64,000 nucleotides of DNA, taken from contig OZ249436.1 of the NCBI GenBank assembly GCA_965235115.1, positions 26,536,001 through 26,600,000 on the forward strand, read 5' to 3'. Position numbers and translations under genes: made by a program. Source of the stretch: Laetmonice hystrix. Lineage: Eukaryota. This document shows, piece by piece, positions 17,932 through 57,816 of the stretch (position 1 is the stretch's first letter; each line of letters begins with the position of its first letter). The notes under the pieces were generated by a model. It saw only the letters and a program-made list of their open reading frames with translations, was not told where the DNA came from and made no database searches.

Positions 17932-18180
17932 TCGGGTGGGCAAAACAATTATTTTGGAACACTCTTTTCTTGACTGTAACTTCTATAATTTTTACCCCAA
18001 TGTCATAATTATTTGGACCATGATATCTGCTACTGTGTCTGAATGACGTGACGTCAAATGTATGAAATGCCCCCTGCCAAAAACAGATGATAGCATGTTT
18101 CAAATATTATGACATTGGGGTAAAAATTCTAGAAGTTACAGTCAAGAAAATAGTGTTCCAAAATTTTTAGGCCCACCCGA
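17932..18180. mobile_element. TA-flanked MITE (Tc1/mariner-like), termini TCGGGTGGGC..GCCCACCCGA
   Basis: Long imperfect inverted arms (tggaacactcttttcttgactgtaacttct..ccccaatgtcataat vs attatgacattgggg..agaagttacagtcaagaaaatagtgttcca). The right TA is restored when the LTR element is removed. Confidence 0.8.
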
Positions 18181-18181
18181 T

Positions 18182-19095
18182 TGTATCGGGCCTTTGTTTA
18201 GGGTTTTGCAGTTTAAATAGGTATTCGATGTTGGGGTAGAGCTTTGGCTATTGCGAGAGGGTTTTCCCGATAATGTCTTCTAAACGTAGGGGTAAGCTAG
18301 GCTCTATCGTATGGCTTCGTGAGATGGGGTCCAACTCAGACTGAGGGATGACTAGCGGTCGAAGGTTCAATCATTTATTAAGACAATCCGGATGTAGAGT
18401 TCGTCCGTGTGTAGAGTACAGATATCTCCTCGCGGTAGATGTAAAGTACAAGTGTCTCCTCTGAAGTTGAAGTAAAGTACAAGTGTCTCCTCTGAAGTTG
18501 AAGTAAAGTACAAGTGTGATATTCACATACGCTACAAGTTTTGACTCTCACCTCCCTTTCTCTGAACTCCCCTAGTAGCTGTGATGTGTAATGTCCGAAA
18601 GTCTGAATCCTAAACGTTTCTCAGTAATTCCGAAGAATCTGCAAAGTCTTGTTTCCGTACTGATCTCCTATTGCAAAGGCTGAATGCTGAAAACCTCCCA
18701 AGTGCGGGATGATGAGAAAGCTAAGTGCTGAGCGAGAGAACTCCACGTCTGCTCATCTCCAAGTTAAAACCACATACGACTACTGCAAGGTTGCGCGTCT
18801 ATATATATCTACCAGCTTTTCGGGGGATTTTCTTGGTTCGTGACTAAGCCTGCACTACCTGAACCTATGGAGGGGTTTGGGCTGGTAAGGTGGATGAGTT
18901 ATTGCTTTTCTGCTGTACCTGCTGAACCTTCCTCCTGTAGGCGAATGATTTATGACTCTGTAGTTGTACCTGTTGCCCTTCTGGCTAAGGCTTGCTGTTG
19001 GTTTGGATACTCTAACATAGGAAATTGTGTGACTAGCTAAAACTGATGTATAAAACCGTATTTGTTAAAAGTTACTAGTGGTGTACTCCAACACA
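18182..19095 (-). repeat. 3' LTR (914 bp)
   Basis: No difference from 29368-30281 found by eye. Minus-strand AATAAA at 18374-18379, TATATATA near 18800, internal 31-bp direct repeat (gtaaagtacaagtgtctcctctgaagttgaa) at ~18441-18515. Confidence 0.97.
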
Positions 19096-19113
19096 CCCTC
19101 GCGGTCCCCCTTC
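19096..19113 (-). promoter_or_regulatory. Polypurine tract (GAAGGGGGACCGCGAGGG) abutting the 3' LTR
   Basis: Purine-rich run directly before the LTR TG on the minus strand; imperfect. Confidence 0.7.
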
Positions 19114-19505
19114 AAATAATTTTCGAAGGAAATTATTTGTAATATTAAAATTATGCCCGGGGGCGATTAAAAACTTACATGTTTCTACCTCTCCGGATTG
19201 TGTAAAACCGTAAATACATGACAAAATAGATTACATATGAAATATATGAGAACCTTCATCACTCATCAACAGAAATAAATATACTCGTAACTTCATGCCA
19301 TAGTCTGAGTAAAATGTTCGTGTGTGGAGTAAAATCTCCCACGATGCGTTGCAAATGTTCATAAGAAGGCGTGTACAATTAGCGTCCTTCTGCCTTCACC
19401 GAAACTTCGAAACAGTATGCGTATAAAGCTGAGACTGCCAACATAGCGAATGTCTCTATATAGCAAAGATTAAATGTTCATGAAGAAAAAGAAAGGTGTA
19501 TGTCA

Positions 19506-22178
19506 CTAAGCCTGGGCCGCTTGCGGTGCCGTGGCAGGGACATATGCTTCAGTTTCAAGCGGGTGGTAGCCGTCTTGGGCGGCCAGGCGGGGGTAGAGAG
19601 GGGTCGAGTGCTCCTGGCTTAACCCCACCGGAACATGAGACCATGTCCCCACGTGCCCTGGTGTATCCGTGTTAATGATCGTGGCGAGGCCCTGATCGTA
19701 ACGGAGAAGTCGAACGAGCACCCTGGTAGGGTGGACTGAAGCCAGCGCCAGTGCATGGCGCCTTGGGAGTGAAACTGTCCGTGGTAACGAGAGAACGGTG
19801 CAGCCCTCCGTCTGAACATTCATGTGGTGTTGAACGATTAGTGCTGATGCCCACGTCAAGGTTATTGTAGCTGACAGGCGGTGTAGTTTAACAGCGTAAT
19901 GAGTTAACAGAGGCAAACGAGATAACGTCAATGTCTCTGCAGCAAAGTTCATCATTCCCAATCGAATGGTTAAAAGTTCGGAGCCCGTGTAAACTTGCAG
20001 TGCTAGGCCTGCAGCGGGTTTGTCTCTGGATACATAATAGGCAAAGAGTCCCAGTGAAAACACACACAATACCGTCAGTAAGATGATCAAAGCAAGCGTA
20101 GCGTAGAGAGGTGCGTGTAGATCAGTCATGATGGGCGGTCCCGCTTGTGGGTGGGTAGAGTGGCCCAGCACAACCTCGGCCACCGTGCGCTGCGGCGTTC
20201 CCAGAGCTGCCAAAGCGAGTAATGAAGCCTTGTGTCGTCGTAGCAGAATAATCACCACGATGACGGCGATGGCAATAGCTGGCATAATCCCGATCGGTAT
20301 CCATGATCTGGTGGCGATGTTCGCTTGATTCGCCTCCATAACGCCTAGGTCATCATGAAACAGCGGAGTGTGCTGTTGGCGGGCCTCTTGAAGTTTTTGA
20401 AGAGAGACTTTAAGATTCGACTGGTCACTTTTGAATTTTTCCGCATTAAATGAGTCGTCGGGGGGGATTGGGTCTGGTATCACCCACGGTTCAGGTAACA
20501 TGTGATCGTCGCGATAACCAACTAGCGGTATGCCGATAGCGTTCAAAAGGATAGAGTTAATAGGATATCGGATAGTGGTTTCGAACTGCTGCTTCGGGCA
20601 AGCGGTTAACTGGTACGGTATCCAAGAGTCCGGAGTCCGTAACGCACAGTCGCAACCCAGTGTGATAAGGGCTAATTGCGAAATAGTCTTCGGTTCGACC
20701 GGCCTGTCCCTGCACATCATATCAGCTTTCGTCGAGAGAGAGCTGACGACGGCACGTCCTTTACCGATATAGATGAACCGTTCCTTAAAGGAAGCGTTGA
20801 CAATGTATGTTGTGCGGCAGATTCGAGAAATGTCTTTAGCGTCGTTTCGATATAGTGCTGTTATGCAAGAGTCCGATGACATGTACTGCATATACCACAT
20901 GTTAGGGCATGTTTGAATTTCGTCTCCAGTACAGTCTTGCCAATCGTGATCGGAAAGTGGTATGAGAAATTGTTTATCAATCGAAACCGCGACTTCGTTC
21001 GGTAACCCTGTAATGAGCGTAGCATCGACTCGCGTCTTGTTAATGACGTGTATCGGAATAGGTAACGCGTGTACGTGATAGATTCGAAACAAATGCTGCT
21101 GAGCCGTGATGGGTATTCGTATGAGAATGTCTAGTCTCCTGCCCTGTCTCGAAAACACGGGGTTCGCATTATCGTAGTAATAAGCTGTTGATGTGAACGC
21201 TAGATTATGGTGCGGGTAATTCTCTTGAAGGAAAACTGAAATGTTAGTTAGTGCTTGTTCGAGCGCGTGGTGCGGCACCAAGTTTGATGAAAGTTCGCCC
21301 CTGGTTAGGTCTCGAATTCCATCGAGGAATTTAACTGATTCTGTTAACATAGAGACAGCAGACAGTGTCATAGCCTGAACTCTGCCTGATAATGTGTAGA
21401 ATAACATCTGTAAATGGCGTGAAATCGTTTCATTGCGTTGCATGCCCCTCACGGCATGAGCCATTAGATTAACATAGCGCGTCACGTTACTGATACGATA
21501 GTGACTATTTAAAAGAGCTTCTACCACACGATCAATCCTATCGTTAGTGACGTTTACCATATGTACAGTATTTACATGTTTAGCATCTTGCTTCGCGCTG
21601 AAGCTGTGAAGCTGGCGCGATAGGGTGGCCATCGCCCTCGCGTTCTTGAGGATATCCTTATTGCGGCCTGTGCCAAATAAATAGTAGCTGATTGTTGATA
21701 CAATCTCGAACGGTGCTCGCGGGTGACGTCTGGCTGACCATTCGTCTTTGGGAAGCAGGCTTAGGGCCGCTTCCAGATTACCGCGGACCTGGCGTAAGGT
21801 TTCGTTCAAACCCCGTCGAACTGTGTTAATGTACATGATGAGCATGTCGTACTGCAGATGACGGTCATTAGTCGCCGGGTGTGAAGCTCGCATCGGAGCG
21901 CGTGCAGCTGTTGGATAAACATCCAACAGGCTGGTCAGAGGTGCTAAATGTACAGGGGGTATGTCGACATGAAAAACCTGGTATATCCAAGCATCTTTAG
22001 CAGTCGAGATCAACTTTGAAGGCTGGAGCACAACCCCATAATTGAGTCGTAACTCTGTCTCATCTAAGAAATTAAGTTGAATAGTGTTTTGGGGTGTTAG
22101 GACCAGTGTCCAAACAACGAGGAATATAATGTTAGAGATCCGCATCTTGACCCTCACTTCCGTACTGTCTGTGAGCAT
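19506..22178 (-). CDS. env: Envelope glycoprotein of errantivirus/baculovirus-F type (class I fusion-like), 890 aa
   Basis: Signal peptide MRISNIIFLVVWTLVL; LRLNYGVV; furin-type RRHPR (21717-21731) followed by the fusion-peptide-like APFEIVSTISYYLFGTG; helical region with N-glycosylation sites; Cys-rich region; TM WIPIGIMPAIAIAVIVVIILL. Confidence 0.88.
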   Translation of the reverse strand: MLTDSTEVRVKMRISNIIFLVVWTLVLTPQNTIQLNFLDETELRLNYGVVLQPSKLISTAKDAWIYQVFHVDIPPVHLAPLTSLLDVYPTAARAPMRASHPATNDRHLQYDMLIMYINTVRRGLNETLRQVRGNLEAALSLLPKDEWSARRHPRAPFEIVSTISYYLFGTGRNKDILKNARAMATLSRQLHSFSAKQDAKHVNTVHMVNVTNDRIDRVVEALLNSHYRISNVTRYVNLMAHAVRGMQRNETISRHLQMLFYTLSGRVQAMTLSAVSMLTESVKFLDGIRDLTRGELSSNLVPHHALEQALTNISVFLQENYPHHNLAFTSTAYYYDNANPVFSRQGRRLDILIRIPITAQQHLFRIYHVHALPIPIHVINKTRVDATLITGLPNEVAVSIDKQFLIPLSDHDWQDCTGDEIQTCPNMWYMQYMSSDSCITALYRNDAKDISRICRTTYIVNASFKERFIYIGKGRAVVSSLSTKADMMCRDRPVEPKTISQLALITLGCDCALRTPDSWIPYQLTACPKQQFETTIRYPINSILLNAIGIPLVGYRDDHMLPEPWVIPDPIPPDDSFNAEKFKSDQSNLKVSLQKLQEARQQHTPLFHDDLGVMEANQANIATRSWIPIGIMPAIAIAVIVVIILLRRHKASLLALAALGTPQRTVAEVVLGHSTHPQAGPPIMTDLHAPLYATLALIILLTVLCVFSLGLFAYYVSRDKPAAGLALQVYTGSELLTIRLGMMNFAAETLTLSRLPLLTHYAVKLHRLSATITLTWASALIVQHHMNVQTEGCTVLSLPRTVSLPRRHALALASVHPTRVLVRLLRYDQGLATIINTDTPGHVGTWSHVPVGLSQEHSTPLYPRLAAQDGYHPLETEAYVPATAPQAAQA

Positions 22179-22831
22179 GGCCGGGCGTATACCTCAAATA
22201 CACCACGACTCCGTGGCCCAGGAATTACGTATCAGCTATAGCGGGACAGAGCCCGGACGATGCATTCAACTTATGATGTGTGTCCCTTACCCCTGGGAGG
22301 GGGAGGTGGCCGCGGTGGCTGTGCCCCTGGAGGCGGCGTCCCGGGGCCTAATCGTGGGCCTGCGGGAGGCCGCCGAGAGGCAGGCTTCTCCCCTCCCAGG
22401 CGCCGGCCGAGGGCAGCAGCGGGCGGCCGCTCCCTGTGCGGCGGGCGGCCCTGGCGACTCTCCCCCGGTGGTGCGGCCCTGGGCGCCGCCGGCCCGGGCG
22501 GGACAGGACCCTCCCCTCTGGGCTCCCGGCGCGGGCGGGGAGAGCGGTGAGGCGAGGGCGGCGCCGGCGTCTCCGTCGCCTCCCGACGGCGGGCCTCTGG
22601 AGGGGCTGGAGGGACTTGAGGGACTTCTGTCCCTCAGTCCCGGGCAACAAGCGAAGTGGGCCCGCTGGGCCAGCGGGGACCTGTAACGGTAAGTGTTACT
22701 TCTTCTTCCGACCGGGCTCACTCCCTTCAAGGACAGCAACTGTAAACCGGTTGTCTGGTGTAATGGAAAAACGAAACAAAAATTCCGAATTTCGAAAAGA
22801 TATTGAAAGTCAATTAATTCACAAGAGCGTG

Positions 22832-25800
22832 TTACTGCAAAGCCACGTCTGGGTCGAAGTCCGGATGAAAATCAGTTCGTTTGACCCACGACGTAATTTT
22901 CCTGTCTCCAGACCACTGGACTAAATAAGTCCAAACTCCTGACTTGAGTTTGCGTCTCTTAAGGATTCTGTCTATTGACCAGTAGGTGTCCTGAGTTGCT
23001 GGAGTGAGTGCGGTGTTATCTACTGTTATGTCATCATCGATGTGCTCCGGTGCCTGGTCGGAGTGATGACTGTTGTCCGGCTGTTGTTCCCCTGTGTTAT
23101 GTACCTGTGCGGGGTCGCCTAGTACAGGCGCCCATGATATGTGAGCTACCTTAATTTTGTTCACATTGTAATAGTGATCTAAGACCTTACCCGTTGAAAT
23201 CGACTGTAGTTTTACCATGTGATCGTCTTTCATGTCTATCACCCTGTATGGTCCTTTGTATTTAGGACTGAATTTTGAAACCCTGTTTGCTGCACAAGTG
23301 GGGTCGTATAAATAGACGCAGTCGCCTACTGTAATTGCTGCTGGGCGTGCTTTCACGTCCAACTTGTCGCGCATATCTCTCTCGTACGATTCTGTAACCG
23401 TGGTCGCCATTTGCTTGATTAGCTCGATTCTCGCGAAAATATCGGCAAAATGTGTATTTAAATCGGAATTTGTTTCCTGCGATCCATCCTCTAATGATGG
23501 CATATTCATCGGCATCGGGTCTCTACCGAAGAGTAGTGTAAACGGAGCAAAACCTGTCCTCGCGCTGATGGCTGAACGAACCGTCCATAACGCGATGGGT
23601 ATCAGCTGTGGCCATTTCGTGTGCGTCTCGTTAATGTAACAAGCCATAACGTCCTCTAGCGTGCGATGTAACCTTTCTACACGCGCATTGCCGGTCGGGT
23701 TTCTTGCGCTTGTGAACGACTGACGACAACCCACACGAGTGGTAACCTCTCTTAGGAGAGCAGATAGAAATGATTGACCCCTATCACTGTGTAATCTCTC
23801 AACTTTGCCATATCGACAAACGATTTTTGACAAGAAAACGTCTGCGACTGTTTTTGCTGTTTGATCCTCTGTGGGATAGGCTTCGGGCCATCCGGTATGG
23901 AGGTCAATGAAGGTTATTATATAACGCAGACCGTTGACTACCTTTAAAGGTCCGATGAAGTCGGTCTGTACCCATTGAAAAGGGTAATGTGGTTTGTCCC
24001 ACGATTTAGCGAGCGCCTGGGGGTGCGGCGATCGTTTTCTTAGCACGCAGACACTACATTGCTGAACGTAGCGAGCGATATCTGCCATATAACCTGGCCA
24101 ATAAAATTTGGACATAACTTTATCCATGACGGCTGACCGTCCAACATGTCCTCCGGCCAATACATCGTTATGTAATAGATAGAGTACTGACTCTCGTAAT
24201 TTAGCTGGAACCACGATTCTCGGTTCGATTTTTGTAACTGCTTTGCTAGCATGCCTAATTTTCGGAAAATGACATAGAACTCCCGGAGGTACCATGTCCA
24301 TGAATTCTGCTGTTGCTACTATCTTCGACGCCTTTCGAAGATCGTCTGGCAGTGTGCCATCCGAAATATAATCGATTAATGCTCGGCATTCACCGTCTGA
24401 ACGTTGTTCCTGCATGATACGGTCAACTGTTAGGTCGATGCGTGCGCCTTGAGAGTCGCCTTTCTGGCCGTTGCTAGGGGGAGCGACCCCCACCGTCTCT
24501 TTCTGGCCAATTTCTCGGGACCGGTCCTTCGTTCGTTTCTTATCAGAAATAGAACAACTCATCATGGCCGACGCGCCGTCATGCCCATGTTCAGCGTGTG
24601 CCTTACAATTAATAACGTCCCCTACGATGGGGTCTAGAGCGCTACACGGAGTAGCGTCCTCGCCTGGGCGGCGGAGCCGTACGCCACTGACTGTTGCAGT
24701 GGGACCGCTATGCGCATTAGCGGATGAGCCTGTAGAGGCTTGAAACCTCGCACTGTCTGCTGCAGTGGAGTCGCCTGCGGAGGGCGGAGTGTCGCCTGCG
24801 GAGGGCGGAGTGTCGCCTGCGGAGGGCGGAGTGTCGCCTGCGGAGGGCGGAGTGTCGCCTGCGGAGGGCGAAAATAGGCCTGTGTAACCACGTGCTGTGG
24901 CTAATATCTCACTGACTGGTGCAGTGGCATCACCTGAGAAGGCGGGAATAATCTCACTGACTGTGGCAGTGGTACCACCTGAGGAGGCGGGAATTGTAAC
25001 ACCGACTGTTGCGGTGGCATCGTCTGTGGATGCGTGAAGTGCCTCGCCTGTTAGGGCGGCTGGTGCTTCGCCTATTAGGGCTGAAGTTAAATCTATTTGT
25101 GCAACGTTGCGTGCTTGTCCTGACTGTGTGTAACACTCATCACCGATCTCTGGTTCGCATGCCGTGCTCGGGGCCGGCCCTGTCTGTACTCGAGATAGGA
25201 AATCGGCTAAGTAATGAGTTTTACCTGGTTCATATTGAAAATCGATGTCGAAGCCCGTAATGAACAAGGCCCATCGAGTCAACCTGCTTGTCGGCGCTTT
25301 CTGCGCGTTCGACAGTAGGGTGAGTAGTGGCTTATGATCGGTAACCACTATAATGCGCATGCCATCTAGGATGTCCTGAAAATGTTGTAGCGCACGTATT
25401 ACAGACAGTGCTTCTTTCTCAGACACTGTATAATTCATTTCGGCGGAAGACATTGTGCATCCCCAAAAGGAGATAGGCCGGTAAATTTGACCTGATAAGT
25501 GACAAAGTGCAGCGCCGCATGCACTCGAAGAGCTGTCCGTCAGCAGGTAAAATGTCTGATTGAAATCGGGGTGTACTAGAATCGGCGGTGATGTAAGTGC
25601 TGCTTTTAAAGATTCGAAAGCGTCCTGTTGTGGCTTGCCCCACTGAAATTTAGCTTCTTTCTTAAGCAATTCGTAAAGCGGTGCTGCTAAGTTCGGAAAT
25701 CTCGGAATAAATATTCTGTAATAGGAGCAAAGTCCTAAGAATGCTCTCACCGTCCTAACGCTTCTGGGTCTCTCAAAATGATCTACTTTCGATAAAATTC

Positions 25801-27319
25801 TCTGTTGCGCCGAGATACCTTTATCAGATAGAACAAACCCTAAGAAGTCTACTTCGGATCTACACCATTCGCATTTCTCAGGCTTAAGAGTTAATGATGC
25901 GCGTATCAAAGCTTTCAAAATTTGGTCAACGTTACTCAAATGAGTATCAAAGTTCGGATCTGACGCGAGGAGATCGTCCATGTACGATACGCAAACTCGC
26001 GGTACGAGGCCTTTCAGCGCTAGCGACATTACTTTTGAGAATGCCCATGGAGCTCCAACGAGTCCCATTGGAATTTTCTTGTATTGCAAGACTCCTTCGA
26101 TCGGTGCTTCGAAAGCGGTGCATTTTCTCGAGGATTCATCTATAGAACACTGAAAAAATCCCGAGCGCAGATCTAATTTGCTATGAAAACGAGGCTTTTT
26201 CGCGGCAATTAGTGAAAATAGTGAGCGCGCCACGGGCATGGGAAATTTTCGCTTCATCGTTATCTTGTTTAACCGCCTAAAATCGGTGCATAGGCGTAGT
26301 CCACCATCCTTTTTCTTCACTACGACCAGCGGACTTCTCCAAACTGAGTCTGATGGTTCGATAACATCTGCCTTTAAAAGTTCTCCAATGTGTTCTTGAA
26401 TGCGTGTAATTTGATTAGGACCGTACCTGTATGGTGCCGTTGTGACGGGCTGGGCGTTCGGCTCGACTTCTATTGACATAGGTGCCAAGTCGCACGAGCC
26501 AAGCTCCTGGAGTGAATCCGCAAAAGCTAGTCTGTTTGATTCCAGCATGTCACGAAATTGTTCCTTTTGACTGTCGGTAATATCCGAGTGTTCCAAATCA
26601 AATGATATGGGTTCCCTGGGCGTTTCCCGAGATTCCATCGCTGATACCTGCTTGTAATTGGTAGGAAGGTGCGGGTCGTCCCGTGAAGGAGCAAAATCTC
26701 TGTCCGCGTATGCCGTCACTGTAGATGGAGTGATGGTGATAACTTCATCCGTGGGGTTCAGAACAGATACAAAAACTCCTCCATTACCAACAACGTCAAC
26801 TGACTTGCCTGCGATAAACGCATCTGGTCCCGTCTGTGTGGGGGTGATATATACCTCCGTCCCATCAGGTACGTCCCGAGAAATGGAGCAAAACATAATG
26901 ACTTCCGAAAAAGGTGGCAAATGAACTTTCCCAACCGTGTGCACTGTGATGCTGTCCCATAGAGTCACGTGTGCTCTATCGAAATCCACTGAAGCCCTCG
27001 TTGCAATTAGAAAGTCTCGACCTAAAATAACATCCTGTGTGAGGTTGTCTATCACCGTAAACTCGAAACAGATGGTAAATGTATCAAGCTGGAAGCGTAA
27101 GCAAACTACTGTACTTGCCATGGCTGTGCTGCCGTCAGCTAGTGTTACCGAGTCATTAACAGATCGTGTTTCAAGCACCAGATCAGCTGGTACTCGCGAG
27201 AGCGCTGTATGTGAGATATATGTGTGGCTGGCGCACGTGTCGACTGCTGCCCACATGCGGTGATCTGTGAACTGAATTTGTAGAAGGGGTGGTAGAGATA
27301 TATGTTTCTTGAATGGCAT
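22832..27319 (-). CDS. pol: Pol polyprotein: protease, RT, RNase H, integrase, C-terminal chromodomain; probably made as Gag-Pol by -1 frameshift
   Basis: AVDTCAS (PR); LCTDFRRLN, LDLRSGFFQ, PMGL, YMDDLL (RT); TDSS, EKEAL, TDHKPL (RH); HHCC finger, TDFIGP, SDRG, VERLHRTL, KYKGPY (IN); YWSIDRILKRR..YLVQWSG..SWV (chromo). Confidence 0.97.
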   Translation of the reverse strand: MPFKKHISLPPLLQIQFTDHRMWAAVDTCASHTYISHTALSRVPADLVLETRSVNDSVTLADGSTAMASTVVCLRFQLDTFTICFEFTVIDNLTQDVILGRDFLIATRASVDFDRAHVTLWDSITVHTVGKVHLPPFSEVIMFCSISRDVPDGTEVYITPTQTGPDAFIAGKSVDVVGNGGVFVSVLNPTDEVITITPSTVTAYADRDFAPSRDDPHLPTNYKQVSAMESRETPREPISFDLEHSDITDSQKEQFRDMLESNRLAFADSLQELGSCDLAPMSIEVEPNAQPVTTAPYRYGPNQITRIQEHIGELLKADVIEPSDSVWRSPLVVVKKKDGGLRLCTDFRRLNKITMKRKFPMPVARSLFSLIAAKKPRFHSKLDLRSGFFQCSIDESSRKCTAFEAPIEGVLQYKKIPMGLVGAPWAFSKVMSLALKGLVPRVCVSYMDDLLASDPNFDTHLSNVDQILKALIRASLTLKPEKCEWCRSEVDFLGFVLSDKGISAQQRILSKVDHFERPRSVRTVRAFLGLCSYYRIFIPRFPNLAAPLYELLKKEAKFQWGKPQQDAFESLKAALTSPPILVHPDFNQTFYLLTDSSSSACGAALCHLSGQIYRPISFWGCTMSSAEMNYTVSEKEALSVIRALQHFQDILDGMRIIVVTDHKPLLTLLSNAQKAPTSRLTRWALFITGFDIDFQYEPGKTHYLADFLSRVQTGPAPSTACEPEIGDECYTQSGQARNVAQIDLTSALIGEAPAALTGEALHASTDDATATVGVTIPASSGGTTATVSEIIPAFSGDATAPVSEILATARGYTGLFSPSAGDTPPSAGDTPPSAGDTPPSAGDTPPSAGDSTAADSARFQASTGSSANAHSGPTATVSGVRLRRPGEDATPCSALDPIVGDVINCKAHAEHGHDGASAMMSCSISDKKRTKDRSREIGQKETVGVAPPSNGQKGDSQGARIDLTVDRIMQEQRSDGECRALIDYISDGTLPDDLRKASKIVATAEFMDMVPPGVLCHFPKIRHASKAVTKIEPRIVVPAKLRESVLYLLHNDVLAGGHVGRSAVMDKVMSKFYWPGYMADIARYVQQCSVCVLRKRSPHPQALAKSWDKPHYPFQWVQTDFIGPLKVVNGLRYIITFIDLHTGWPEAYPTEDQTAKTVADVFLSKIVCRYGKVERLHSDRGQSFLSALLREVTTRVGCRQSFTSARNPTGNARVERLHRTLEDVMACYINETHTKWPQLIPIALWTVRSAISARTGFAPFTLLFGRDPMPMNMPSLEDGSQETNSDLNTHFADIFARIELIKQMATTVTESYERDMRDKLDVKARPAAITVGDCVYLYDPTCAANRVSKFSPKYKGPYRVIDMKDDHMVKLQSISTGKVLDHYYNVNKIKVAHISWAPVLGDPAQVHNTGEQQPDNSHHSDQAPEHIDDDITVDNTALTPATQDTYWSIDRILKRRKLKSGVWTYLVQWSGDRKITSWVKRTDFHPDFDPDVALQ
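24770..24870 (-). repeat. 21-bp in-frame tandem repeat (PSAGDTP; four full copies plus one partial) in the RNase H-integrase linker
   Basis: gtcgcctgcggagggcggagt repeated from 24770 with period 21. Confidence 0.95.
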
Positions 27320-27334
27320 TACAATCGAATTATC

Positions 27335-27394
27335 GTCCCTCTGACAGAGTGCTAATACCTTGGTGACTGTCGAGGGACACGCTGGGCGTTTCCC
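27335..27394 (-). promoter_or_regulatory. -1 programmed ribosomal frameshift signal (G GGA AAC plus hairpin)
   Basis: Slippery heptamer at 27388-27394 in gag-frame register; 9-nt spacer; stem GTCCCTC-GACAG / CTGTC-A-GAGGGAC. Pol is in the -1 frame and open across the site. Confidence 0.85.
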
Positions 27395-28566
27395 TGGTCC
27401 TGATATGTAATTTGAGAATGGTCGTCAGGTTGAAATCTGGCCTTGGCCCCAATTAAATGGTTCGGCTGGTCAGTGAGGTGACGGGCGCCGCGTCTGGCGG
27501 TGTTCTGTAACCATCGGCACGCGTCAGTGGAGTGGCCGCGGGACTTGTGATAAGCGCAGTATGGGCTGCCGTCCTCCGGGGGGGTGTTTTGCTGGGTCGC
27601 GCTGCTTCCCTTCTCCCTCCACTGAGGAGCGTTGCCATACCTTCCCCTATAGCCTCGTCTGTCCCATTGCTGTTGGCCCTGGTGTTGATTTCCTGAGCCT
27701 CGCGCCTGGGATCTCTCGATTCTGGCGAGTGCCGCTAAAATGTTATCATAACGGCCTAGTGGTGCTGACTCCGTTGCGGCGCATGATTTCGTCTGCGGGC
27801 CTACCGTTTCCAGGCGGGAAGCCATCTCGACTGCCTCGGCGAATGTTGATGGGTTCTGTACTGCCAAAAGGTTACTGAGAGACGGTTCCAAACCTCCGAT
27901 AAAGACCGATGTAAGAATTTGATCAGTGACGTCATAGTTGCGCTGTTTGTGTCGGAGCGTTCCCGCGAAATCGAGAGCTGTCTGACCTTTCTGTTGCTTT
28001 AAGCCGAAAAGATCCCTGTGCTTTTGCCAAGTGGGCCGTTTGTCTCTGAAAATGTCAATCATATGGGACTTGAAAGCTGAATAAGATGCCGTTGCCGTGG
28101 CGTCCAATGCTCTCATCCAGTCAGCTGCTCTGTCTTTGAGACCATGCAGTGCCATTGCTAGGGTGTGATCATCTGGCCATCCGTAGATGCGCGCCAAACT
28201 CTCTGTTTCATCAAAATATGTTCGAATGTTTTCATTGGCAGATCCTGAAAATGTTGGCAAATGTAGAGTGGGTAGTTTATGGTAGGGTAGCCTCCCTACA
28301 TCGCTTCTAGTTACCGAGCTTCCCGCCGTATCTTCGTCACGATGGGCTTGAATTTCCCCGTTCACATTGTTACCTTGTCCGTCACCGTCGGGGTGTGGGT
28401 TTGGAGGGGGAATCTGGATCGGACCTACTTGCTGGGCGTCCGGCAGTGGTGGCTGCTGAGGCCCTGGTTGCAGTGGCTGTAGAGCCCCTGGCTGTGGTGG
28501 CTGTGGAACCCCTGGCTGTGGTGGCTGCGGAGCCGGCTGCTGCGGGGCGGCATCGTCCCCGTTCAT
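27352..28566 (-). CDS. gag: Gag, 404 aa (P/Q-rich N-terminus, capsid domain, CHHC zinc knuckle)
   Basis: LPTFSG..E..W capsid start, LKQQKGQT..F major-homology-like region, FIGGL, C-x2-H-x4-H-x4-C (CAYHKSRGHSTDAC). Confidence 0.93.
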   Translation of the reverse strand: MNGDDAAPQQPAPQPPQPGVPQPPQPGALQPLQPGPQQPPLPDAQQVGPIQIPPPNPHPDGDGQGNNVNGEIQAHRDEDTAGSSVTRSDVGRLPYHKLPTLHLPTFSGSANENIRTYFDETESLARIYGWPDDHTLAMALHGLKDRAADWMRALDATATASYSAFKSHMIDIFRDKRPTWQKHRDLFGLKQQKGQTALDFAGTLRHKQRNYDVTDQILTSVFIGGLEPSLSNLLAVQNPSTFAEAVEMASRLETVGPQTKSCAATESAPLGRYDNILAALARIERSQARGSGNQHQGQQQWDRRGYRGRYGNAPQWREKGSSATQQNTPPEDGSPYCAYHKSRGHSTDACRWLQNTARRGARHLTDQPNHLIGAKARFQPDDHSQITYQDQGNAQRVPRQSPRY

Positions 28567-29160
28567 GTCGATGTCTTGTTGTTGAAGCCGAAATGGTTGC
28601 CGGAGATCTGGAGGCGCGTCTGGTATGTGGTGTGCTTGGGAGAGATTAAAACGCGCCTTACCACTATCACCGGCTGTAGAGTTCCCGCTCGCAGAAAGTT
28701 GATGGTCTTCCTGTAAATCTGTTATGTTGAAGGAGTGTCCCTCGATTACTATGCGATTGTTGCCTTGTAATTCGACCGGTTGAAAATCAGGTGCTGACCG
28801 TAGTTGTCTTTTCTTCCAGAGAGACGAGGAGGTAGAGGCGTGACCGGGCGTCGCCAGCCTTGGCGCGGGGGGCGACGCGTGCCGCGGGCTCCGGTCGGAC
28901 TGGGCGAGGGGGGTCGGGCGCCACCGGCTCCCCTCTTTGTAAAATAAATTTTAAAACGTACCCGAAAGTCGTTTCGTCAGTCTCTGTAGAGTAGTCCAAT
29001 CAGAAACATCTCGCCATACTTGAGTTTTATGAGGTAATGTTCTCCACCGTAGTTATCCTGTAGTTCAAGCTCCCCGTGAAGGTATCTGCAACGTTGGGCT
29101 TTTCCACAGGTGTTCCGTATAGTTTGCTGTAGTTGGGCTGTCCACTAAGTAGTTCGTGGT

Positions 29161-29371
29161 TCCTCCCGTGGTGTTCCGCCGTTTGGATTCTCCACGAAGT
29201 GTATCCTCCCTTAGCGTCCGCCGTTTGGATTCTCCACCAAGTGTTTCCTCCCGTAGCGTCCGCCGTTTGGATTCTCCACCAAGGGTTTCCTCCGGTAGCG
29301 TCCGCCGTTTGGATTCTCCACCAAGTGTTTCCTCCGGTAGCGTCCGCCGTTTGGATTCTCCACCAAGTGTA
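29161..29371 (-). repeat. Five tandem 42-43-bp units, each carrying an LTR-end mimic plus a primer-binding site (TGGTGGAGAAT, tRNA-Ala-like)
   Basis: Units start at 29161, 29204, 29246, 29288 and 29330. Minus-strand consensus: (T/A)ACA-CT-TGGTGGAGAATCCAAACGGCGGACGCTA..GGAGGA. The LTR-adjacent unit overlaps the real LTR end. Confidence 0.93.
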
Positions 29372-30281
29372 TCGGGCCTTTGTTTAGGGTTTTGCAGTTT
29401 AAATAGGTATTCGATGTTGGGGTAGAGCTTTGGCTATTGCGAGAGGGTTTTCCCGATAATGTCTTCTAAACGTAGGGGTAAGCTAGGCTCTATCGTATGG
29501 CTTCGTGAGATGGGGTCCAACTCAGACTGAGGGATGACTAGCGGTCGAAGGTTCAATCATTTATTAAGACAATCCGGATGTAGAGTTCGTCCGTGTGTAG
29601 AGTACAGATATCTCCTCGCGGTAGATGTAAAGTACAAGTGTCTCCTCTGAAGTTGAAGTAAAGTACAAGTGTCTCCTCTGAAGTTGAAGTAAAGTACAAG
29701 TGTGATATTCACATACGCTACAAGTTTTGACTCTCACCTCCCTTTCTCTGAACTCCCCTAGTAGCTGTGATGTGTAATGTCCGAAAGTCTGAATCCTAAA
29801 CGTTTCTCAGTAATTCCGAAGAATCTGCAAAGTCTTGTTTCCGTACTGATCTCCTATTGCAAAGGCTGAATGCTGAAAACCTCCCAAGTGCGGGATGATG
29901 AGAAAGCTAAGTGCTGAGCGAGAGAACTCCACGTCTGCTCATCTCCAAGTTAAAACCACATACGACTACTGCAAGGTTGCGCGTCTATATATATCTACCA
30001 GCTTTTCGGGGGATTTTCTTGGTTCGTGACTAAGCCTGCACTACCTGAACCTATGGAGGGGTTTGGGCTGGTAAGGTGGATGAGTTATTGCTTTTCTGCT
30101 GTACCTGCTGAACCTTCCTCCTGTAGGCGAATGATTTATGACTCTGTAGTTGTACCTGTTGCCCTTCTGGCTAAGGCTTGCTGTTGGTTTGGATACTCTA
30201 ACATAGGAAATTGTGTGACTAGCTAAAACTGATGTATAAAACCGTATTTGTTAAAAGTTACTAGTGGTGTACTCCAACACA
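29368..30281 (-). repeat. 5' LTR (914 bp)
   Basis: Matches 18182-19095; the ORF track gives identical 66-aa translations at 18840 and 30026. Confidence 0.97.
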
Positions 30282-30766
30282 CGATATACCGCACATTCCA
30301 GGTGAACGATCATAAAGTGCTCACCTAAAAAGTTCTAGTAGTCGATGGAGTTCACAAATTGTATATAATGCATGTCTAGATCAACTTGTATATGTATATT
30401 AATCTAAAAGGGTCAAATGTATTTCAATTGACTTGGGGATGTACTGGAGAGTATATATCGCACGTTCCTTAATTGGCTAAAAATCAAAGAAAATATTTAA
30501 ATAAGAGCATAGCATGATGAGAAATACACAGTTAGATGTGCCTATGAGTACCCTTAATTTACATAAAAAATATAAGGGAAGTGCAACTGAGTGATAATTT
30601 TTTTTGATTTTCTTATACCCTTGTATTTCTTCTTATTTTTTTTTATCATTGTTCTAATGTCTTTTTTTCTGTTTATGTGACAATGCGAAGAAAATTCACG
30701 CCGAGTCCCAACGGGAGTGGCTGGAAAAATGGAAACGGGAAATGGGGGAGAAAGAATGGTTGGCAT

Positions 30767-38889: not shown

Positions 38890-39348
38890 CCTCTTGTAAG
38901 TGTATATATGATCGTCGTCACAGACGACCCCACCTTTCACCGACTTGGGCCGAGTCTGCATTCGACGGAGGCGTTCGACGAATCGATTGTACCGAATCGA
39001 TGTTGGTCGGGACGCGGAAGTGCTGCCTGATGGGAAGAGGCTAAATCTCATAGCTGGAATCCAGGGTGTGACGTCATTAGAGCTATGTAGGTCAGGGAAT
39101 ACCCTGCTCTGGCTGCCAGCAAAATATGGATTCACCACCTATAGCCTAACCGGAACGGACCCTAACTCGCACAAGGAGGTACGCATGTAGGCATATATAC
39201 CTCGTCGCCTGTTAACTTTGGCCTCTATTCTTGAAAGCGGTATTCTGGAGGGCTCTGCACAGTTCTAAAGAGGAATTCTACGGGTCTAAGACGATATGCA
39301 TTCAGGCCTGGAGACCGGAGTAGTACACTTTCAGCGGCGGAGTTGGGG

Positions 39349-40640
39349 ACCAGGATTCAGGCAGGCTTGGTCACCTATCATCACCAATACCCGAGGCCTG
39401 GGCACCTTATAGGTGGAAGTAGGCCCATATGGGACCTGGATTCAGGGCTTGGTCACCTATATTGACCAACACCCGAGGCCTGGGCACCTTATAGGTGGGA
39501 GTCTATCCATTATATGGGACCTGGATTCAGGGCTTGGTCACCTATATTGACCAACACCCGAGGCCTGGGCACCTTATAGGTGGGAGTCTATCCATTATAT
39601 GGGACCAGGATTCAGGGCTTGGTCACCTATATCGACCAACACCCCAGCCCTGTTCACCTTATAGGTGGGAGTCTATCCATTATATGGGACCTGGATTCAG
39701 GGCTTGGTCACCTATATTGACCAACACCCGAGGCCTGGGCACCTAGCTTATAGGTGGGAGTCTATCCATTATATGGGACCAGGATTCAGGGCTTGGTCAC
39801 CTATATCGACCAACACCCCAGCCCTGTTCACCTTAGGCCAAAAAAAAAAAAAGTTTCGTTTCTTGTCCTTTCATATAAAAAAAGTGGTGCGGTGACGCGG
39901 TTTTTTTTTTTTCATCTTTCTTTTTTTTTTTTGGATGCAACTAGACAACGGCCGATTCTTCGAATGCAATTGCTGTTGGGTACATAAATCTTGAAGAAAA
40001 GACTAATGCAATGATGTTCAATGTTTTAGAATGTGTAAAACGCACATAAAATCAACAAGACTAACAGAAAAACGCCAACGCCAAAGAACCGTTGCAACGT
40101 TCTGTCACAGCGCTACACTGCCCACCATATGAAGCAGTCGGATTTGAAAAAAAAAGACTTGACGCGGGGGTTTTTAGGTGACGCGCGCGGGGACAAGAAA
40201 CGAATCTTTTTTTTTTTTTGGCCTTATATAGGTGGGAGTCTATCCATTATATATATGGGACCTGGATTCAGGGCTTGGTCACCTATATCGACCAACACCC
40301 CAGCCCTGTTCACCTTATAGGTGGGAGTCTATCCATTATATGGGACCTGGATTCAGGGCTTGGTCACCTATATTGACCAACACCCGAGGCCTGGGCACCT
40401 TTAATAGGTAGGAGTAGGCCTATCTGGGACCAGGATTCAGGGCTTGGTCACCTATATTGACCAACACCCGAGGCCTGGGCACCTTTAATAGGTAGGAGTA
40501 GGCCTATCTGGGACCAGGATTCAGGGCTTGGTCACCTATAACATCATCAATACCCGAGGCCTGGGCACCTTATAGGTGGGAGTCTATCCATTATGGGACC
40601 AGGATTCAGGGATTGGTCACCTATATCGACCAATACCCAT
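39349..40640 (+). repeat. Tandem array of an ~85-bp unit (left arm of the foldback element)
   Basis: ataggtgggagtctatccattatatgggacctggattcagggcttggtcacctatattgaccaacacccgaggcctgggcacctt, period 85 (39491, 39576); two subunit variants (GAGGCCTGGGC vs CAGCCCTGTT). Confidence 0.93.
39836..40223. mobile_element. PIF/Harbinger-type MITE nested in the 85-bp array
   Basis: Termini GGCCAAAAAAA..TTTTTTGGCC, subterminal cgtttcttgtcc/ggacaagaaacg, 3-bp TTA TSD (39833-39835, 40224-40226). Confidence 0.85.
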
Positions 40641-41084
40641 GCAAGGGCTTCCCTTTTAATACCAGCAAAGTACATTGTGACCTAGTTTCTGTGTGGCATC
40701 AACTGAAATAAAACATGTACTGAAATAAAACTGTGTAACTCTGTTCGTTTTTAGTAGTTGCATGGTTCAATAATGATCCTGTCCATTTGTCCCCTTTAAA
40801 CCCATGGCGGACCCCCTGATGGTCATGATATTAAGTATTAAGTTTACTTTTCATGGCCATATCCTGTATTATTATATGCCTTAAATAGAACATAATAGTT
40901 TATGTTCTGACTTTAAAATATCTGAGTTACTTTCGTTGCTCATTTAAAGCGCATGAATATATGTACTACAGCTGATGACCCCACTGATGGTCATGCTCCA
41001 TGAAATAAAACATGTATGCCTACTGAAATAAAAACTGTGTAACTGTGTTCGTGTTTTGTTCCTACTCAGCTAAATCGACCAATA

Positions 41085-41593
41085 CCTGAGGCCTACTCCC
41101 ACCTATAAGGTGCCCAGGCCTCGGGTATTGGTCGATATAGGTGACCAAGCCCTGAATCCTGGTCCCATAATGGATAGACTCCCACCTATAAGGTGAACAG
41201 GGCTGGGGTGTTGGTCGATATAGGTGACCAAGCCCTGAATCCAGGTCCCATATAATGGATAGACTCCCACCTATAAGGTGAACAGGGCTGGGGTGTTGGT
41301 CGATATAGGTGACCAAGCCCTGAATCCAGGTCCCATATAATGGATCTAGACTCCCACCTATAAGGTGAACAGGGCTGGGGTGTTGGTCGATATCTAGGTG
41401 ACCAAGCCCTGAATCCAGGTCCCATAATGGATAGACTCCCACCTATAAGGTGAACAGAACTGGGGTGTTGGTCGATATAGGTGACCAAGCCCTGAATCCT
41501 GGTCCCATGGCATATAATGGATAGACTCCCACCTACAAGGTGACTAGGCCTCGGGTATTGGTCGATTTAGCTGACCAAGTCCTGAATCCTGGC
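41085..41593 (-). repeat. Inverted tandem array of the same ~85-bp unit (right arm)
   Basis: Reverse-complement copies; the ORF track shows the same cycling peptides on the minus strand (41062-41488). Confidence 0.93.
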
Positions 41594-56822: not shown

Positions 56823-57524
56823 CCTACTACCTCGTCTGTAGGCCTACACATTATCACGAACCTCTCCCTGTCTCGACTCCACTAGTCTCCAGTACTTTTA
56901 AAACTTGAACTAAAGTCCAAACGACTTGTAAAGTTGTATAGGAGGCCTGTAGACGCGTATGAAGGATATGAATGAATGGCGGCAGGGCTGTGGTTCGACT
57001 TAGTGACGTCATTAGTCCTGGAATCCCGCTCTTTTTTGATTGGTTAATACGATGGGCGTGGCAAAAATGGCGGTCTACTCCAATATTCGTGCCTTCTATA
57101 GAGCACACCTCTTTCTATTATCGAATTCTCTATTTTGAACAGCCTATTGGGTTCAATTTTGGACTGGAAAGAAGCTTTAAGGTAAGAAGCACATGTACAG
57201 ACAGCTGAAAAGCTAATATTTTGCCTTTCTTTAAACAGTCAAAAAGTCTTAAGGACCAGATATACTGGTTCGCCCGGCCGGCCGATTTTGGTATATGGTT
57301 GACCACTGAACAACAATGAAAAATGCAGGAGGATGCATATTGGACGGTATCCTGTGACCATATATATGTAAAAATCGCCATCTGACTAGTTTAGTCAGGG
57401 AATATTACAAAAATCTGGGAACAAATTCCCAGATTTTCCCAGAAATTTTTTCACCAATGTGTTCGTAAAAACGGAGCCCTGTTGGGGACATGCAGAAAAA
57501 AATCGTTTCTGAGAAAAAGATTTG

Positions 57525-57816
57525 TGGTGATCTCGAAATTACCACTTAGTGACGTCATTAACTCGTTATTACGACTTAATGACGTCACTAAGTCGTTATT
57601 ACGAGTTAATCGCATTCGTTTCAAAGAAAAAAAATGTGATGATCTCAAAATTACCACTTAGTGACGTCATTAAGTCGTAATATCGAGTTAATGACGTCAC
57701 TAAGTCGTTATTACGAGTTAACCGCGTTCGTTTCAAAGAAAAACATTTGTGGTGATATCGAAATTACCACTTAGTGACGTCATTAAGTCGTAATAACGAG
57801 TTAATGACGTCACTAA
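57525..57816. repeat. ~112-bp tandem repeat (about 2.6 copies), each with a hairpin pair of TGACGTCA palindromes
   Basis: TGACGTCA at 57550, 57580, 57662, 57692, 57775 and 57805. Confidence 0.92.

What the first reader, a model, noticed from the sequence alone, without database searches (positions are those of the whole stretch)
29161..29371. Polarised tandem array of 'LTR end + primer-binding site' cassettes in a young env-bearing Gypsy element
Seen: five 42-43-bp units lie directly downstream of the 5' LTR. On the minus strand each reads (T/A)ACA-CT-TGGTGGAGAAT, i.e. the last LTR bases, the 2-nt spacer and the PBS. Divergence rises away from the LTR: the two proximal units differ by one base, unit 3 has lost the CA end (ACC), and the distal unit has a broken CCA complement (TCG). 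A further relic lies at 29040-29048. Established: LTR elements normally have one PBS; TGGTGGAGAAT matches the 3' end of tRNA-Ala isoacceptors ending ATTCTCCA-CCA; the LTR-terminal CA is the integrase attachment site. Inference: priming at an internal unit would still give a cDNA ending in CA, so these could be redundant priming/att cassettes that expand or contract during strand transfers. They could also be decoys for 3'-tRNA-fragment silencing. I do not know of this architecture being described, but could not check the literature.
Basis: partly seen in the sequence, partly recalled or inferred. Interest (0 to 1): 0.85.

Follow-up and report, generated by a model that had tools for sequence, protein, structure and literature searches.

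The report
Repeated primer-binding site in retrotransposon leader
A very young, intact gypsy-type retrotransposon carries its tRNA primer-binding site five times in a row (plus three decayed older copies) right after its left long terminal repeat; this is a real and unusual twist on the common habit of such elements to carry tandem repeats in their leader, but nothing here shows that the extra copies are used.

Summary
A 42-bp tandem array (29156-29370, 5.1 copies, 93% matches) starts in the last 3 bases of the 5' LTR of a 12,100-bp minus-strand Ty3/Gypsy element (18182-30281). The element has identical 914-bp LTRs, a CGAT target duplication, open gag, pol and an F-like env ORF. Each unit reads ACA-CT-TGGTGGAGAAT. 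Divergence rises away from the LTR (0, 2, 3, 5 changes), and three degenerate relics follow.

The 11-mer matches the 3' end of published mammalian tRNA-Ala-AGC; the host tRNA was not available. Five related families each carry one PBS of the same type, so the array is derived in this family.

The functional reading is not supported by anything I could test:
- The 3' LTR of this copy abuts the target duplication with no n x 42 bp extension, so this insertion was primed at the proximal PBS.
- The few substitutions give no evidence of selection on the internal PBSs.
- tRNA complementarity is only 11 nt, which weakens the tRF-decoy idea.

The element holds four other tandem arrays, and leader repeats are common in insect gypsy-like elements. 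Best reading: a leader minisatellite that happens to include the PBS. No other copy of the family could be found, so copy-number variation remains untested.

The parts
18182..30281 (-). Complete Ty3/Gypsy-type LTR retrotransposon with three open reading frames, 12,100 bp
   Evidence: LTR pair at offset 11186, TG..CA ends, flanked by CGAT/CGAT. No other fragment of it lies in the window.
18178..18181 (.). Target-site duplication CGAT next to the 3' LTR
   Evidence: It abuts the canonical LTR end, so there is no 42-bp extension.
30282..30285 (.). Target-site duplication CGAT next to the 5' LTR
29368..30281 (-). 5' LTR, 914 bp. It contains a perfect 31-bp x 2.5 tandem repeat (29627-29703) and one AATAAA at about 29565.
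18182..19095 (-). 3' LTR, 914 bp, identical to the 5' LTR
   Evidence: 0 mismatches in 914.
19096..19113 (-). Polypurine tract GAAGGGGGACCGCGAGGG directly upstream of the 3' LTR
29156..29370 (-). 42-bp tandem array of five units, each ACA-CT-TGGTGGAGAAT plus 26 nt. U1 29329-29370, U2 29287-29328, U3 29245-29286, U4 29203-29244, U5 about 29160-29202.
   Evidence: TRF; 19-mer scan; unit comparison.
29355..29365 (-). LTR-proximal PBS TGGTGGAGAAT, 2 nt after the LTR end. This is the one used for this insertion.
   Evidence: Position. 11-nt complement of published tRNA-Ala-AGC 3' ends. The same motif sits in the same position in five related families.
29040..29154 (-). Three degenerate PBS-like relics (29133-29154, 29092-29114, 29040-29059) that continue the array with rising divergence
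   Evidence: Local alignments against shuffles; GTGGA spacing of 50, 38 and 60.
28567..29367 (-). Leader (5' UTR), 801 nt, between the LTR end and the gag ATG
   Evidence: No Rfam family matches it.
27352..28566 (-). gag, 404 aa, open. It has a 24-bp x 3.9 repeat at aa 11-42.
   Evidence: Pfam Retrotrans_gag 1.5e-9.
22832..27319 (-). pol, 1495 aa from its first ATG, open. Its frame is open from 27424 and overlaps gag by 73 nt in the -1 frame. It has in-frame repeats at aa 767-805 and 817-850.
   Evidence: Pfam protease, RVT_1, RT_RNaseH, Integrase_H2C2 and rve, in that order.
19506..22178 (-). ORF3, 890 aa, open: env-like membrane protein with a predicted class I (F-type) fusion fold
   Evidence: Conserved in relatives. 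Two hydrophobic segments. AF2 pLDDT 74.9. Foldseek best hits are pneumo/paramyxovirus F, E = 5e-8.

Best explanation
The array is a leader (5' UTR) minisatellite. It arose from a tandem duplication that spanned the last 3-6 bases of U5, the 2-nt spacer, the 11-nt tRNA-Ala-type primer-binding site and about 26 nt of leader.

The duplication has recurred. Eight generations are recognisable: five units and three relics. Turnover most likely comes from template switching by reverse transcriptase between repeat copies, including mis-registered plus-strand transfer between PBS copies. Ordinary replication slippage or unequal exchange would give the same pattern.

The LTR-proximal unit stays perfect because it is the working PBS next to the working LTR end. 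The young units are homogenised with it, and the distal edge decays as at any array edge. That produces the polarity.

Units 2-4 still carry an intact 11-nt tRNA complement, so they could bind primer. But the extra copies are by-products, not an evolved redundancy system.

Shown: the anatomy, the polarity, the derived state, and use of the proximal PBS for this insertion. Inferred: the duplication mechanism and the lack of function.
For: - The array is real and starts within 3 nt of the LTR end.
- Changes relative to U1 are 0, 2, 3 and 5, followed by heavily diverged relics.
- The 3' LTR ends at the canonical ACA directly against the CGAT target duplication. This insertion therefore came from priming at unit 1.
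- The same element has four other tandem arrays: LTR 31 bp x 2.5 perfect, gag 24 bp x 3.9, pol 21 bp x 4.8 perfect, pol 45 bp x 2.6. Tandem duplication is general in this lineage.
- Five related families (L001, L002/L005, L006, L007, L010) have one PBS, TGGTGGAGA(A/T), right after the LTR.
- In Drosophila, 19 of 49 LTR-retrotransposon 5' UTRs are tandemly repeated (PMC8872304). Tirant leader repeats vary from 2 to 6 copies (PMC5408687). UTR repeats next to LTRs are also common in plants (bioRxiv 2021.07.15.452536).
- There is no sign of constraint on the internal PBSs: 5 substitutions in U3-U4, none in the 11-mer, P = 0.22 by chance. U5 has already lost TGG.
- The RNA fold of the array is only mildly better than shuffles, z = -2.1. 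No Rfam family matches.
Against: - An array starting exactly at the U5/PBS junction is unlikely if arrays fall at random in the 801-nt leader: about 0.7%, computed post hoc. This hints at a mechanism tied to the priming site.
- The monotonic gradient over eight units also fits new units being added at the LTR side by PBS-dependent strand transfer, which would require the internal PBSs to be used.
- The unit ends (A.ACA) resemble the two natural LTR ends about as much as those ends resemble each other. An integration-competent end after internal priming is therefore not excluded.
- Only one copy of the family could be examined.
Confidence: 0.55

Rival explanations
1. Redundant priming cassettes. 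Several of the PBS copies bind the primer tRNA and start minus-strand synthesis. Internal starts still give a DNA end finishing in CA. Mis-registered transfers between PBS copies expand or contract the array and keep its LTR-proximal units young.
For: - Four units keep a perfect 11-nt tRNA complement, and three of these are preceded by ACA-CT.
- The polarity and the exact start at the priming site fit turnover limited to units lying between the LTR and a usable PBS.
- Engineered retroviral vectors with two PBSs are reported to initiate at both. I know this only from the title of Voronin and Pathak, J Virol 2004, seen in the reference list. The paper is not held, so the details rest on my own knowledge.
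Against: - This insertion shows no 42-bp extension of the 3' LTR.
- There is no statistical sign of selection on the internal PBSs.
- Unit 3 has lost CA and unit 5 has lost TGG.
- Relatives manage with one PBS.
- An extension of the 3' LTR would lie beyond the polyadenylation site, so it would not be inherited. Internal priming alone therefore gives no heritable benefit (inference).
Confidence: 0.17
2. Cis-acting protein-binding array. The repeated 42-mer is a multivalent site for a host or element protein. As DNA it could act as an enhancer, insulator or chromatin-targeting module, like the leader repeats of gypsy, ZAM and Tirant. As RNA it could act as a packaging or dimerisation signal. Inclusion of the PBS in the unit would be incidental.
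For: - It has the same position (5' UTR just after the PBS) and similar copy numbers to leader repeats with insulator or protein-binding activity in Drosophila (PMC8872304; PMC5408687).
- The 17 nt after the PBS (unit positions 17-33) are unchanged in U1-U4.
- The leader is long, 801 nt, against about 40-180 nt in relatives.
Against: - No motif or binding factor could be identified.
- The invariance of positions 17-33 is not significant with so few substitutions.
- No strong RNA structure and no Rfam hit.
- Relatives lack the array.
Confidence: 0.2
3. Decoy or sponge for 3' tRNA fragments. The extra PBS copies soak up tRFs that would otherwise block the working PBS or silence the transcript.
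For: Multiple tRNA-complementary sites lie in one transcript. Targeting of PBSs by 3' tRFs is established in mouse (Schorn et al. 2017, from my own knowledge, not checked here).
Against: - Complementarity to published tRNA-Ala-AGC 3' ends stops after 11 nt.
- The 5' part of an 18-22-nt tRF, which would serve as its seed, would not pair.
- More sites would be expected to raise, not lower, sensitivity to small-RNA silencing (inference).
- The host tRNA set is unknown.
Confidence: 0.05
4. Assembly artefact: the array length is wrong, expanded or collapsed by the assembler.
For: Short tandem arrays are error-prone in assemblies, and I could not see reads.
Against: Units 3, 4 and 5 carry distinct ordered substitutions. 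The array is flanked by unique sequence and by decayed relics in register. An artefact would not create a divergence gradient.
Confidence: 0.03

Closest known systems
[quoted passage not shown]
   Same: A tandem array in the leader, downstream of the 5' LTR, of an env-bearing Ty3/Gypsy element, with a handful of units. Copy number is known to vary in Tirant, from 2 to 6.
   Different: In the passages I read, those repeats are described only as lying in the 5' UTR; nothing there says the PBS is part of the repeat unit (that they lie downstream of a single PBS is my own knowledge). Here the unit starts in the last bases of U5 and contains the PBS. The units are also shorter (42 bp against 102-307 bp). 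No protein binding is known.
Engineered retroviral vectors with two primer-binding sites (Voronin and Pathak, J Virol 2004; seen as a reference)
   Same: More than one tRNA-complementary site lies in one genomic RNA. This allows initiation at more than one place and deletion or duplication between the sites.
   Different: Those vectors are artificial, with two full 18-nt PBSs far apart. Here the array is natural, with four to five 11-nt sites 42 nt apart. There is no evidence of use, and the paper itself could not be read.
Hypervariable tandem repeats next to the polypurine tract in plant Ty3/Gypsy elements (Ogre/Tat; cited)
   Same: A short tandem array sits next to a priming site of reverse transcription in an untranslated region. 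It is thought to arise during replication of the element.
   Different: Those arrays sit at the plus-strand primer (PPT, 3' UTR), not the minus-strand primer. They are not described as containing the primer site.
Related env-bearing Gypsy families in ENA assemblies ERZ26168297 and ERZ25767047 (loci L001, L002/L005, L006, L007, L010)
   Same: Same gene order (gag, pol, about 900-aa ORF3). gag is 38-50% identical to the two gag relatives found (the genes of L001 and L002), and pol 43-44% identical to the pol relatives of L005, L006, L007 and L010. The same PBS type, TGGTGGAGA(A/T), lies 1-2 nt after the LTR.
   Different: Each has a single PBS and a short leader (about 40-180 nt). L001 has no PBS relics in its leader.

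Membership tests
Ty3/Gypsy (Metaviridae) LTR retrotransposon | Direct LTRs with TG..CA ends, flanked by a short target-site duplication | tested here: met
   914-bp LTRs with 0 mismatches, TGT...ACA ends, CGAT/CGAT.
Ty3/Gypsy (Metaviridae) LTR retrotransposon | pol domain order protease - RT - RNase H - integrase | tested here: met
   Pfam hits in that order along the 1495-aa ORF.
Ty3/Gypsy (Metaviridae) LTR retrotransposon | tRNA-complementary PBS just after the 5' LTR and a polypurine tract just before the 3' LTR | tested here: met
   TGGTGGAGAAT lies 2 nt after the LTR and GAAGGGGGACCGCGAGGG lies before the 3' LTR. The match is to published mammalian tRNA-Ala-AGC 3' ends. The host tRNA has not been seen.
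Env-bearing (errantivirus-like) Gypsy element | Third ORF after pol encoding a membrane fusion glycoprotein | tested here: met
   Open 890-aa ORF3 with two hydrophobic segments. The predicted fold matches class I F proteins, Foldseek E = 5e-8. More than 1000 relatives.
Env-bearing (errantivirus-like) Gypsy element | Phylogenetic placement of RT/pol inside the insect genus Errantivirus | not tested
   The best named pol hits are 27-35% identical (fish, sea urchin; 'transposon 297', 29%). No tree was built. The neighbouring transposase points to a marine invertebrate, possibly a mollusc.
Leader (5' UTR) tandem-repeat arrays of gypsy-like elements | Tandem array between the 5' LTR and gag | tested here: met
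   29156-29370 lies within the 801-nt leader. It differs in that the unit includes the PBS.
Leader (5' UTR) tandem-repeat arrays of gypsy-like elements | Unit number varies among copies of the family | not testable with these tools
   There is no second copy in the window, in protein collections, or in metagenome, viral or prokaryote contigs.
Leader (5' UTR) tandem-repeat arrays of gypsy-like elements | Binding of host proteins, or insulator/enhancer activity | not testable with these tools
   No binding data are available, and no known motif was recognised.
Multi-PBS retroelement (functional use of more than one PBS) | Two or more sites complementary to the 3' end of the primer tRNA | tested here: inconclusive
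   Four intact 11-mers and one with TCG. They are complementary to published tRNA-Ala-AGC ends. The host tRNA is unknown, and no tRNA gene lies in the window or in related loci.
Multi-PBS retroelement (functional use of more than one PBS) | Initiation at an internal PBS, visible as a 3' LTR extended by whole units | tested here: not met
   For this one insertion, the 3' LTR ends at the canonical ACA directly against the target duplication. Other insertions could not be examined.
tRF-target / decoy site | Pairing with an 18-22-nt 3' tRNA fragment, including its 5' seed | tested here: inconclusive
   Against published mammalian tRNA-Ala-AGC ends the match stops after 11 nt, so the seed part would not pair. 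Host tRNA and small RNAs are unknown.

The most novel reading that the evidence does not exclude
The internal PBS copies are really used. Primer tRNA binds several units, and mis-registered plus-strand transfer between PBS copies adds and removes units at the LTR-proximal end. The array would then be a natural, self-renewing multi-PBS system: a record of strand-transfer errors and a buffer against loss or blocking of a single PBS. I could find no description of this in a natural retroelement.
Probability: 0.17. Interest if true: 0.65.

Novelty: new variant of a known kind. Interest (0 to 1): 0.4.

Why it matters
Leader tandem repeats are ordinary in gypsy-like elements. A natural array whose unit includes the primer-binding site and the last bases of U5 is not something I could find described.

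If many copies of this family exist in the host genome, their unit counts and LTR flanks would form a ready-made natural data set. It would show how reverse transcription handles several identical priming and transfer sites, which has so far been studied with engineered two-PBS vectors.

If the array is only a neutral minisatellite, it remains a useful caution for annotation. LTR finders that expect one PBS will report several, and the element's true PBS is the LTR-proximal one.

Tried and rejected
- **Other copies of the family.** The exact gag product is not on record. The best gag relative is 50% identical and the best pol relative 44%. The 19-mer gave two chance hits in metagenome contigs, inside unrelated coding-like sequence. 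Longer unit patterns gave nothing in viral or prokaryote genome contigs. Self-BLAST found no fragment or solo LTR elsewhere in the window. The closest ORF3 relative (P0243, 48% identical) sits on a contig whose DNA could not be delivered. L008 and L009 are cut before the leader.
- **Host tRNA.** ARAGORN found no tRNA gene in the window or in five related loci. The tRNA-Ala assignment therefore rests on published mammalian sequences.
- **tRNA read-through origin of the unit.** Rejected. Beyond the 11-mer the unit does not match the published tRNA-Ala 3' part, and no Rfam family, tRNA included, hits 28500-30300.
- **Structured RNA element.** The fold is only z = -2.1 against shuffles.
- **Long-range pairing or repeats of the unit elsewhere in the element.** Only the relic and one chance 9-mer turned up.
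- **PBS relics in the closest relative's leader (L001).** None above chance.
- **Upstream ORF through the array.** Two frames are open across it, but this was not pursued and no coding signal was tested.
- **Literature.** Searching for the PBS string returned mostly PCR primers. Searches for natural multiple or duplicated PBSs found nothing relevant. The sugar-beet pararetrovirus hit concerns separate genome components, not an array.
- **Structure prediction with related-locus ORF3s.** I did not resend those sequences and used search-derived homologues instead.
- **A correction of my own.** I first counted 10-12 differences for U5 from an ungapped comparison. With one inserted base allowed it is 4 substitutions plus 1 indel. 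There is therefore no sharp step between U4 and U5.

Full report
**What is there**

Tandem Repeats Finder reports a 42-bp array at 29156-29370: 5.1 copies, 93% matches, no indels. Each unit, read on the minus strand, is ACA-CT-TGGTGGAGAAT followed by 26 nt. The 19-mer TGGTGGAGAATCCAAACGG occurs five times in the window, four exact and one with one mismatch. All five are in the array, against 0.01 expected by chance.

The array belongs to a 12,100-bp element on the minus strand, 18182-30281.
- The LTRs are 914 bp (29368-30281 and 18182-19095) and identical at all 914 positions.
- They begin TGT and end ACA, and are flanked by a 4-bp target duplication, CGAT, on both sides.
- A polypurine tract precedes the 3' LTR.
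- Three ORFs are open, with no stops or frameshifts: gag (404 aa, Retrotrans_gag), pol (1495 aa; protease, RT, RNase H, integrase in the Ty3/Gypsy order) and ORF3 (890 aa).
- pol overlaps gag by 73 nt in the -1 frame, the usual arrangement.

The LTR ends at 29368, two bases (CT) follow, and TGGTGGAGAAT occupies 29365-29355.

**Units and polarity**

In phase from 29370:
- U1 and U2 are identical.
- U3 differs at two positions, one of which turns ACA into ACC.
- U4 differs at three positions.
- U5 is 43 nt, with four substitutions (one turns TGG into TCG) and one inserted base.

My first ungapped count of 10-12 differences for U5 was an artefact of that insertion.

The base before ACA is T at the LTR and again before U5, so GATACA is shared there. 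It is A before U2-U4. The founding duplication therefore probably took at least six LTR bases.

Beyond U5, three degenerate matches to the ACA-CT-PBS part of the unit lie at 29133-29154, 29092-29114 and 29040-29059.
- Their summed score is 57, against 45 +/- 3.9 in dinucleotide shuffles; 4 of 300 shuffles reach it.
- All three fall in the first 125 nt after the array, which happened in 0.3% of shuffles.
- GTGGA cores are spaced 42, 42, 42, 42, 50, 38 and 60 nt apart.

The five units are thus the young end of a longer decaying series of eight.

**The primer**

No tRNA gene lies in the window or in the related loci, and the host genome is not in the collections. Two papers print mammalian tRNA-Ala-AGC sequences that end CATTCTCCACCA (PMC10878346; PMC10620816). 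The first 11 bases of the PBS are the exact complement: acceptor strand, discriminator and CCA. Pairing stops at base 12.

**Relatives**

The closest gag and pol products in the protein collection are 50% and 44% identical. I fetched the surrounding DNA for five related families: L001, L002/L005, L006, L007 and L010, from ENA assemblies ERZ26168297 and ERZ25767047.
- All have gag and pol; L001, L006, L007 and L010 also carry an ORF3 of about 900 aa (L002 and L005 have a shorter third ORF of 519-550 aa).
- Each has exactly one TGGTGGAGA(A/T), 1-2 nt after the LTR end.
- Their leaders are short, about 40-180 nt.
- None has a tandem repeat at that place.
- L001 has no PBS relics in its leader.

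The PBS type is ancestral to the group, and the array is derived in the window's family.

**Tests of the functional reading**

*3' LTR extension.* If minus-strand synthesis had started at unit k, the right end of the DNA would carry k-1 extra units. The integrated 3' LTR would then be followed by (k-1) x 42 bp before the target duplication. This follows from the standard model of reverse transcription. In this copy the 3' LTR ends at the canonical ACA, directly against CGAT. This insertion was therefore primed at the proximal PBS. That is a single data point.

*Constraint.* U3 and U4 carry five substitutions at four sites. None is in the 11-mer, but that happens by chance with P = 0.22, so there is no evidence of constraint. 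U5 has already lost TGG and U3 has lost CA.

*att-like ends.* The unit shares only 3-6 nt with the LTR end. However, the two natural LTR ends share little more with each other (C.A.ACA against the unit's A.ACA, read). An integration-competent end is not excluded.

*tRF decoy.* With 11 nt of complementarity at the tRNA's extreme 3' end, the 5' part of an 18-22-nt tRF would not pair. This weakens the idea. It is an inference and depends on the host tRNA.

*Other properties.*
- The array folds only slightly better than shuffles, z = -2.1.
- It matches no Rfam family.
- The unit has no other match or complement in the element beyond the relic and one chance 9-mer.

**Context that favours an ordinary origin**

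The element contains four more tandem arrays:
- a perfect 31-bp x 2.5 repeat in each LTR;
- 24 bp x 3.9 in gag (aa 11-42);
- 45 bp x 2.6 in pol (aa 767-805);
- a perfect 21 bp x 4.8 in pol (aa 817-850).

This lineage duplicates short segments freely.

In Drosophila, 19 of 49 LTR-retrotransposon 5' UTRs are tandemly repeated. The gypsy and ZAM leader repeats act as insulators (PMC8872304), and Tirant leader repeats vary from two to six copies (PMC5408687). UTR repeats next to LTRs are also frequent in plants.

What sets this array apart is that the unit contains the PBS. A start within 3 nt of the LTR end has a chance of about 0.7% if arrays fell at random in the leader (post hoc). This hints that the priming or strand-transfer site is a hot spot for the duplication.

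**Mechanism**

I think the array most likely arose and turns over through template switching during reverse transcription. With several identical PBS copies, the plus-strand strong-stop DNA, which ends in a PBS copy, can pair with the wrong PBS complement on the minus strand. This adds or removes whole units on the LTR side.
- Units that have lost the PBS drop out of this exchange and decay.
- The proximal unit is held by selection because it primes.

That gives the observed polarity. Slippage or unequal exchange in host DNA, together with selection on the first unit, gives the same pattern. One copy cannot separate the two. These steps are inferred, not shown.

**Literature**

Ten searches found no natural element with a tandemly repeated PBS. 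The nearest experimental analogue is the engineered two-PBS vector of Voronin and Pathak (2004). I saw it only as a reference and the paper is not held. The library lacks most subscription journals, so absence of a report is weak evidence of novelty.

**ORF3**

ORF3 has no Pfam match and no sequence match to solved structures.
- It is conserved in relatives at 25-38% identity.
- It has 1194 relatives at E <= 0.001 among cluster representatives.
- It has two hydrophobic segments near residues 623-660 and 683-718.
- A model built on a 42-sequence alignment has mean pLDDT 74.9. Its best matches are pneumovirus and paramyxovirus F proteins: Foldseek E = 5e-8, probability 1.0. TM-scores are low (0.2-0.44), as expected for proteins that change shape.

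'Env-bearing' is therefore supported, with a class I F-type fusion fold. A faint Baculo_F hit is recorded for a downstream gene in L002, a related locus.

**Host**

The window is rich in mobile elements. The neighbouring Transposase_21 ORF has its best named relatives in molluscs (Mytilus edulis 44%, Haliotis, Saccostrea, Ostrea) and in other marine invertebrates. This suggests a marine invertebrate host but does not identify it.

**Verdict**

The architecture is real and unusual. The proposed functions are untested, and the one testable prediction is negative for this copy.

I rate it a new variant of a known kind, a leader tandem array that includes the PBS, with interest 0.4. The decisive evidence is a census of the family's copies and LTR flanks in the host genome, which none of the collections available here allowed.

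Noticed in passing
window 19506-22178 (-): ORF3 (890 aa) has no Pfam or PDB sequence match. It belongs to a family of more than 1000 cluster representatives, and its predicted fold matches pneumo/paramyxovirus class I F fusion proteins (Foldseek E = 5e-8).
   Followed up: yes
window 24770-24870 and 24906-25021 (pol aa 817-850 and 767-805); 28442-28534 (gag aa 11-42): In-frame tandem repeats lie inside coding regions. A perfect 21-bp x 4.8 and a 45-bp x 2.6 array sit between the RNase H and integrase domains of pol, and a 24-bp x 3.9 array sits near the N-terminus of gag. At 1495 aa, pol is longer than most of its closest relatives (about 1350-1470 aa).
   Followed up: partly
window 29627-29703 and 18441-18517: A perfect 31-bp x 2.5 tandem repeat lies in each LTR, about 60 nt upstream of the single AATAAA. 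It may be a duplicated promoter or enhancer module.
   Followed up: no
L002:9963, L005:1993, L006:3952, L007:3697, L010:3045: In four related families the single PBS is followed within 1-3 nt by a shared motif, A(A)CCCGAA. It is conserved although the rest of the leader differs. Its meaning is unknown. It does not look like a canonical tRNA T-arm complement.
   Followed up: no
window 29040-29051 against L001:9826-9837: The most distal relic shares 12 consecutive bases (GGTGGAGAACAT) with the PBS and its first following bases in the closest relative, L001. The oldest relic may therefore keep the ancestral post-PBS sequence. The extra 3 bases beyond the shared motif are only weak evidence.
   Followed up: partly
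L009:4828-6234: In a related element the ORF after pol carries dUTPase (PF00692) and DCD domains, according to the precomputed Pfam list.
   Followed up: no
window 12901-15879 (+): Open 992-aa ORF with a Transposase_21 (tnp2) domain. Its best relatives are 44-48% identical, and the named ones are mostly molluscan (Mytilus, Haliotis, oysters).
   Followed up: partly
window 59306-61255 (-) and 62025-63269 (-): Adjacent ORFs with reverse transcriptase (RVT_1, 5.9e-36) and weak endonuclease/exonuclease/phosphatase domains: a LINE-like non-LTR retrotransposon.
   Followed up: no
window 47303-47987; 39346-41589; 57503-57816: Further tandem arrays lie outside the element: 57 bp x 12 (97%); 85-bp arrays in three blocks, of which the third appears to be in opposite orientation to the first two; and 112 bp x 2.8.
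   Followed up: no
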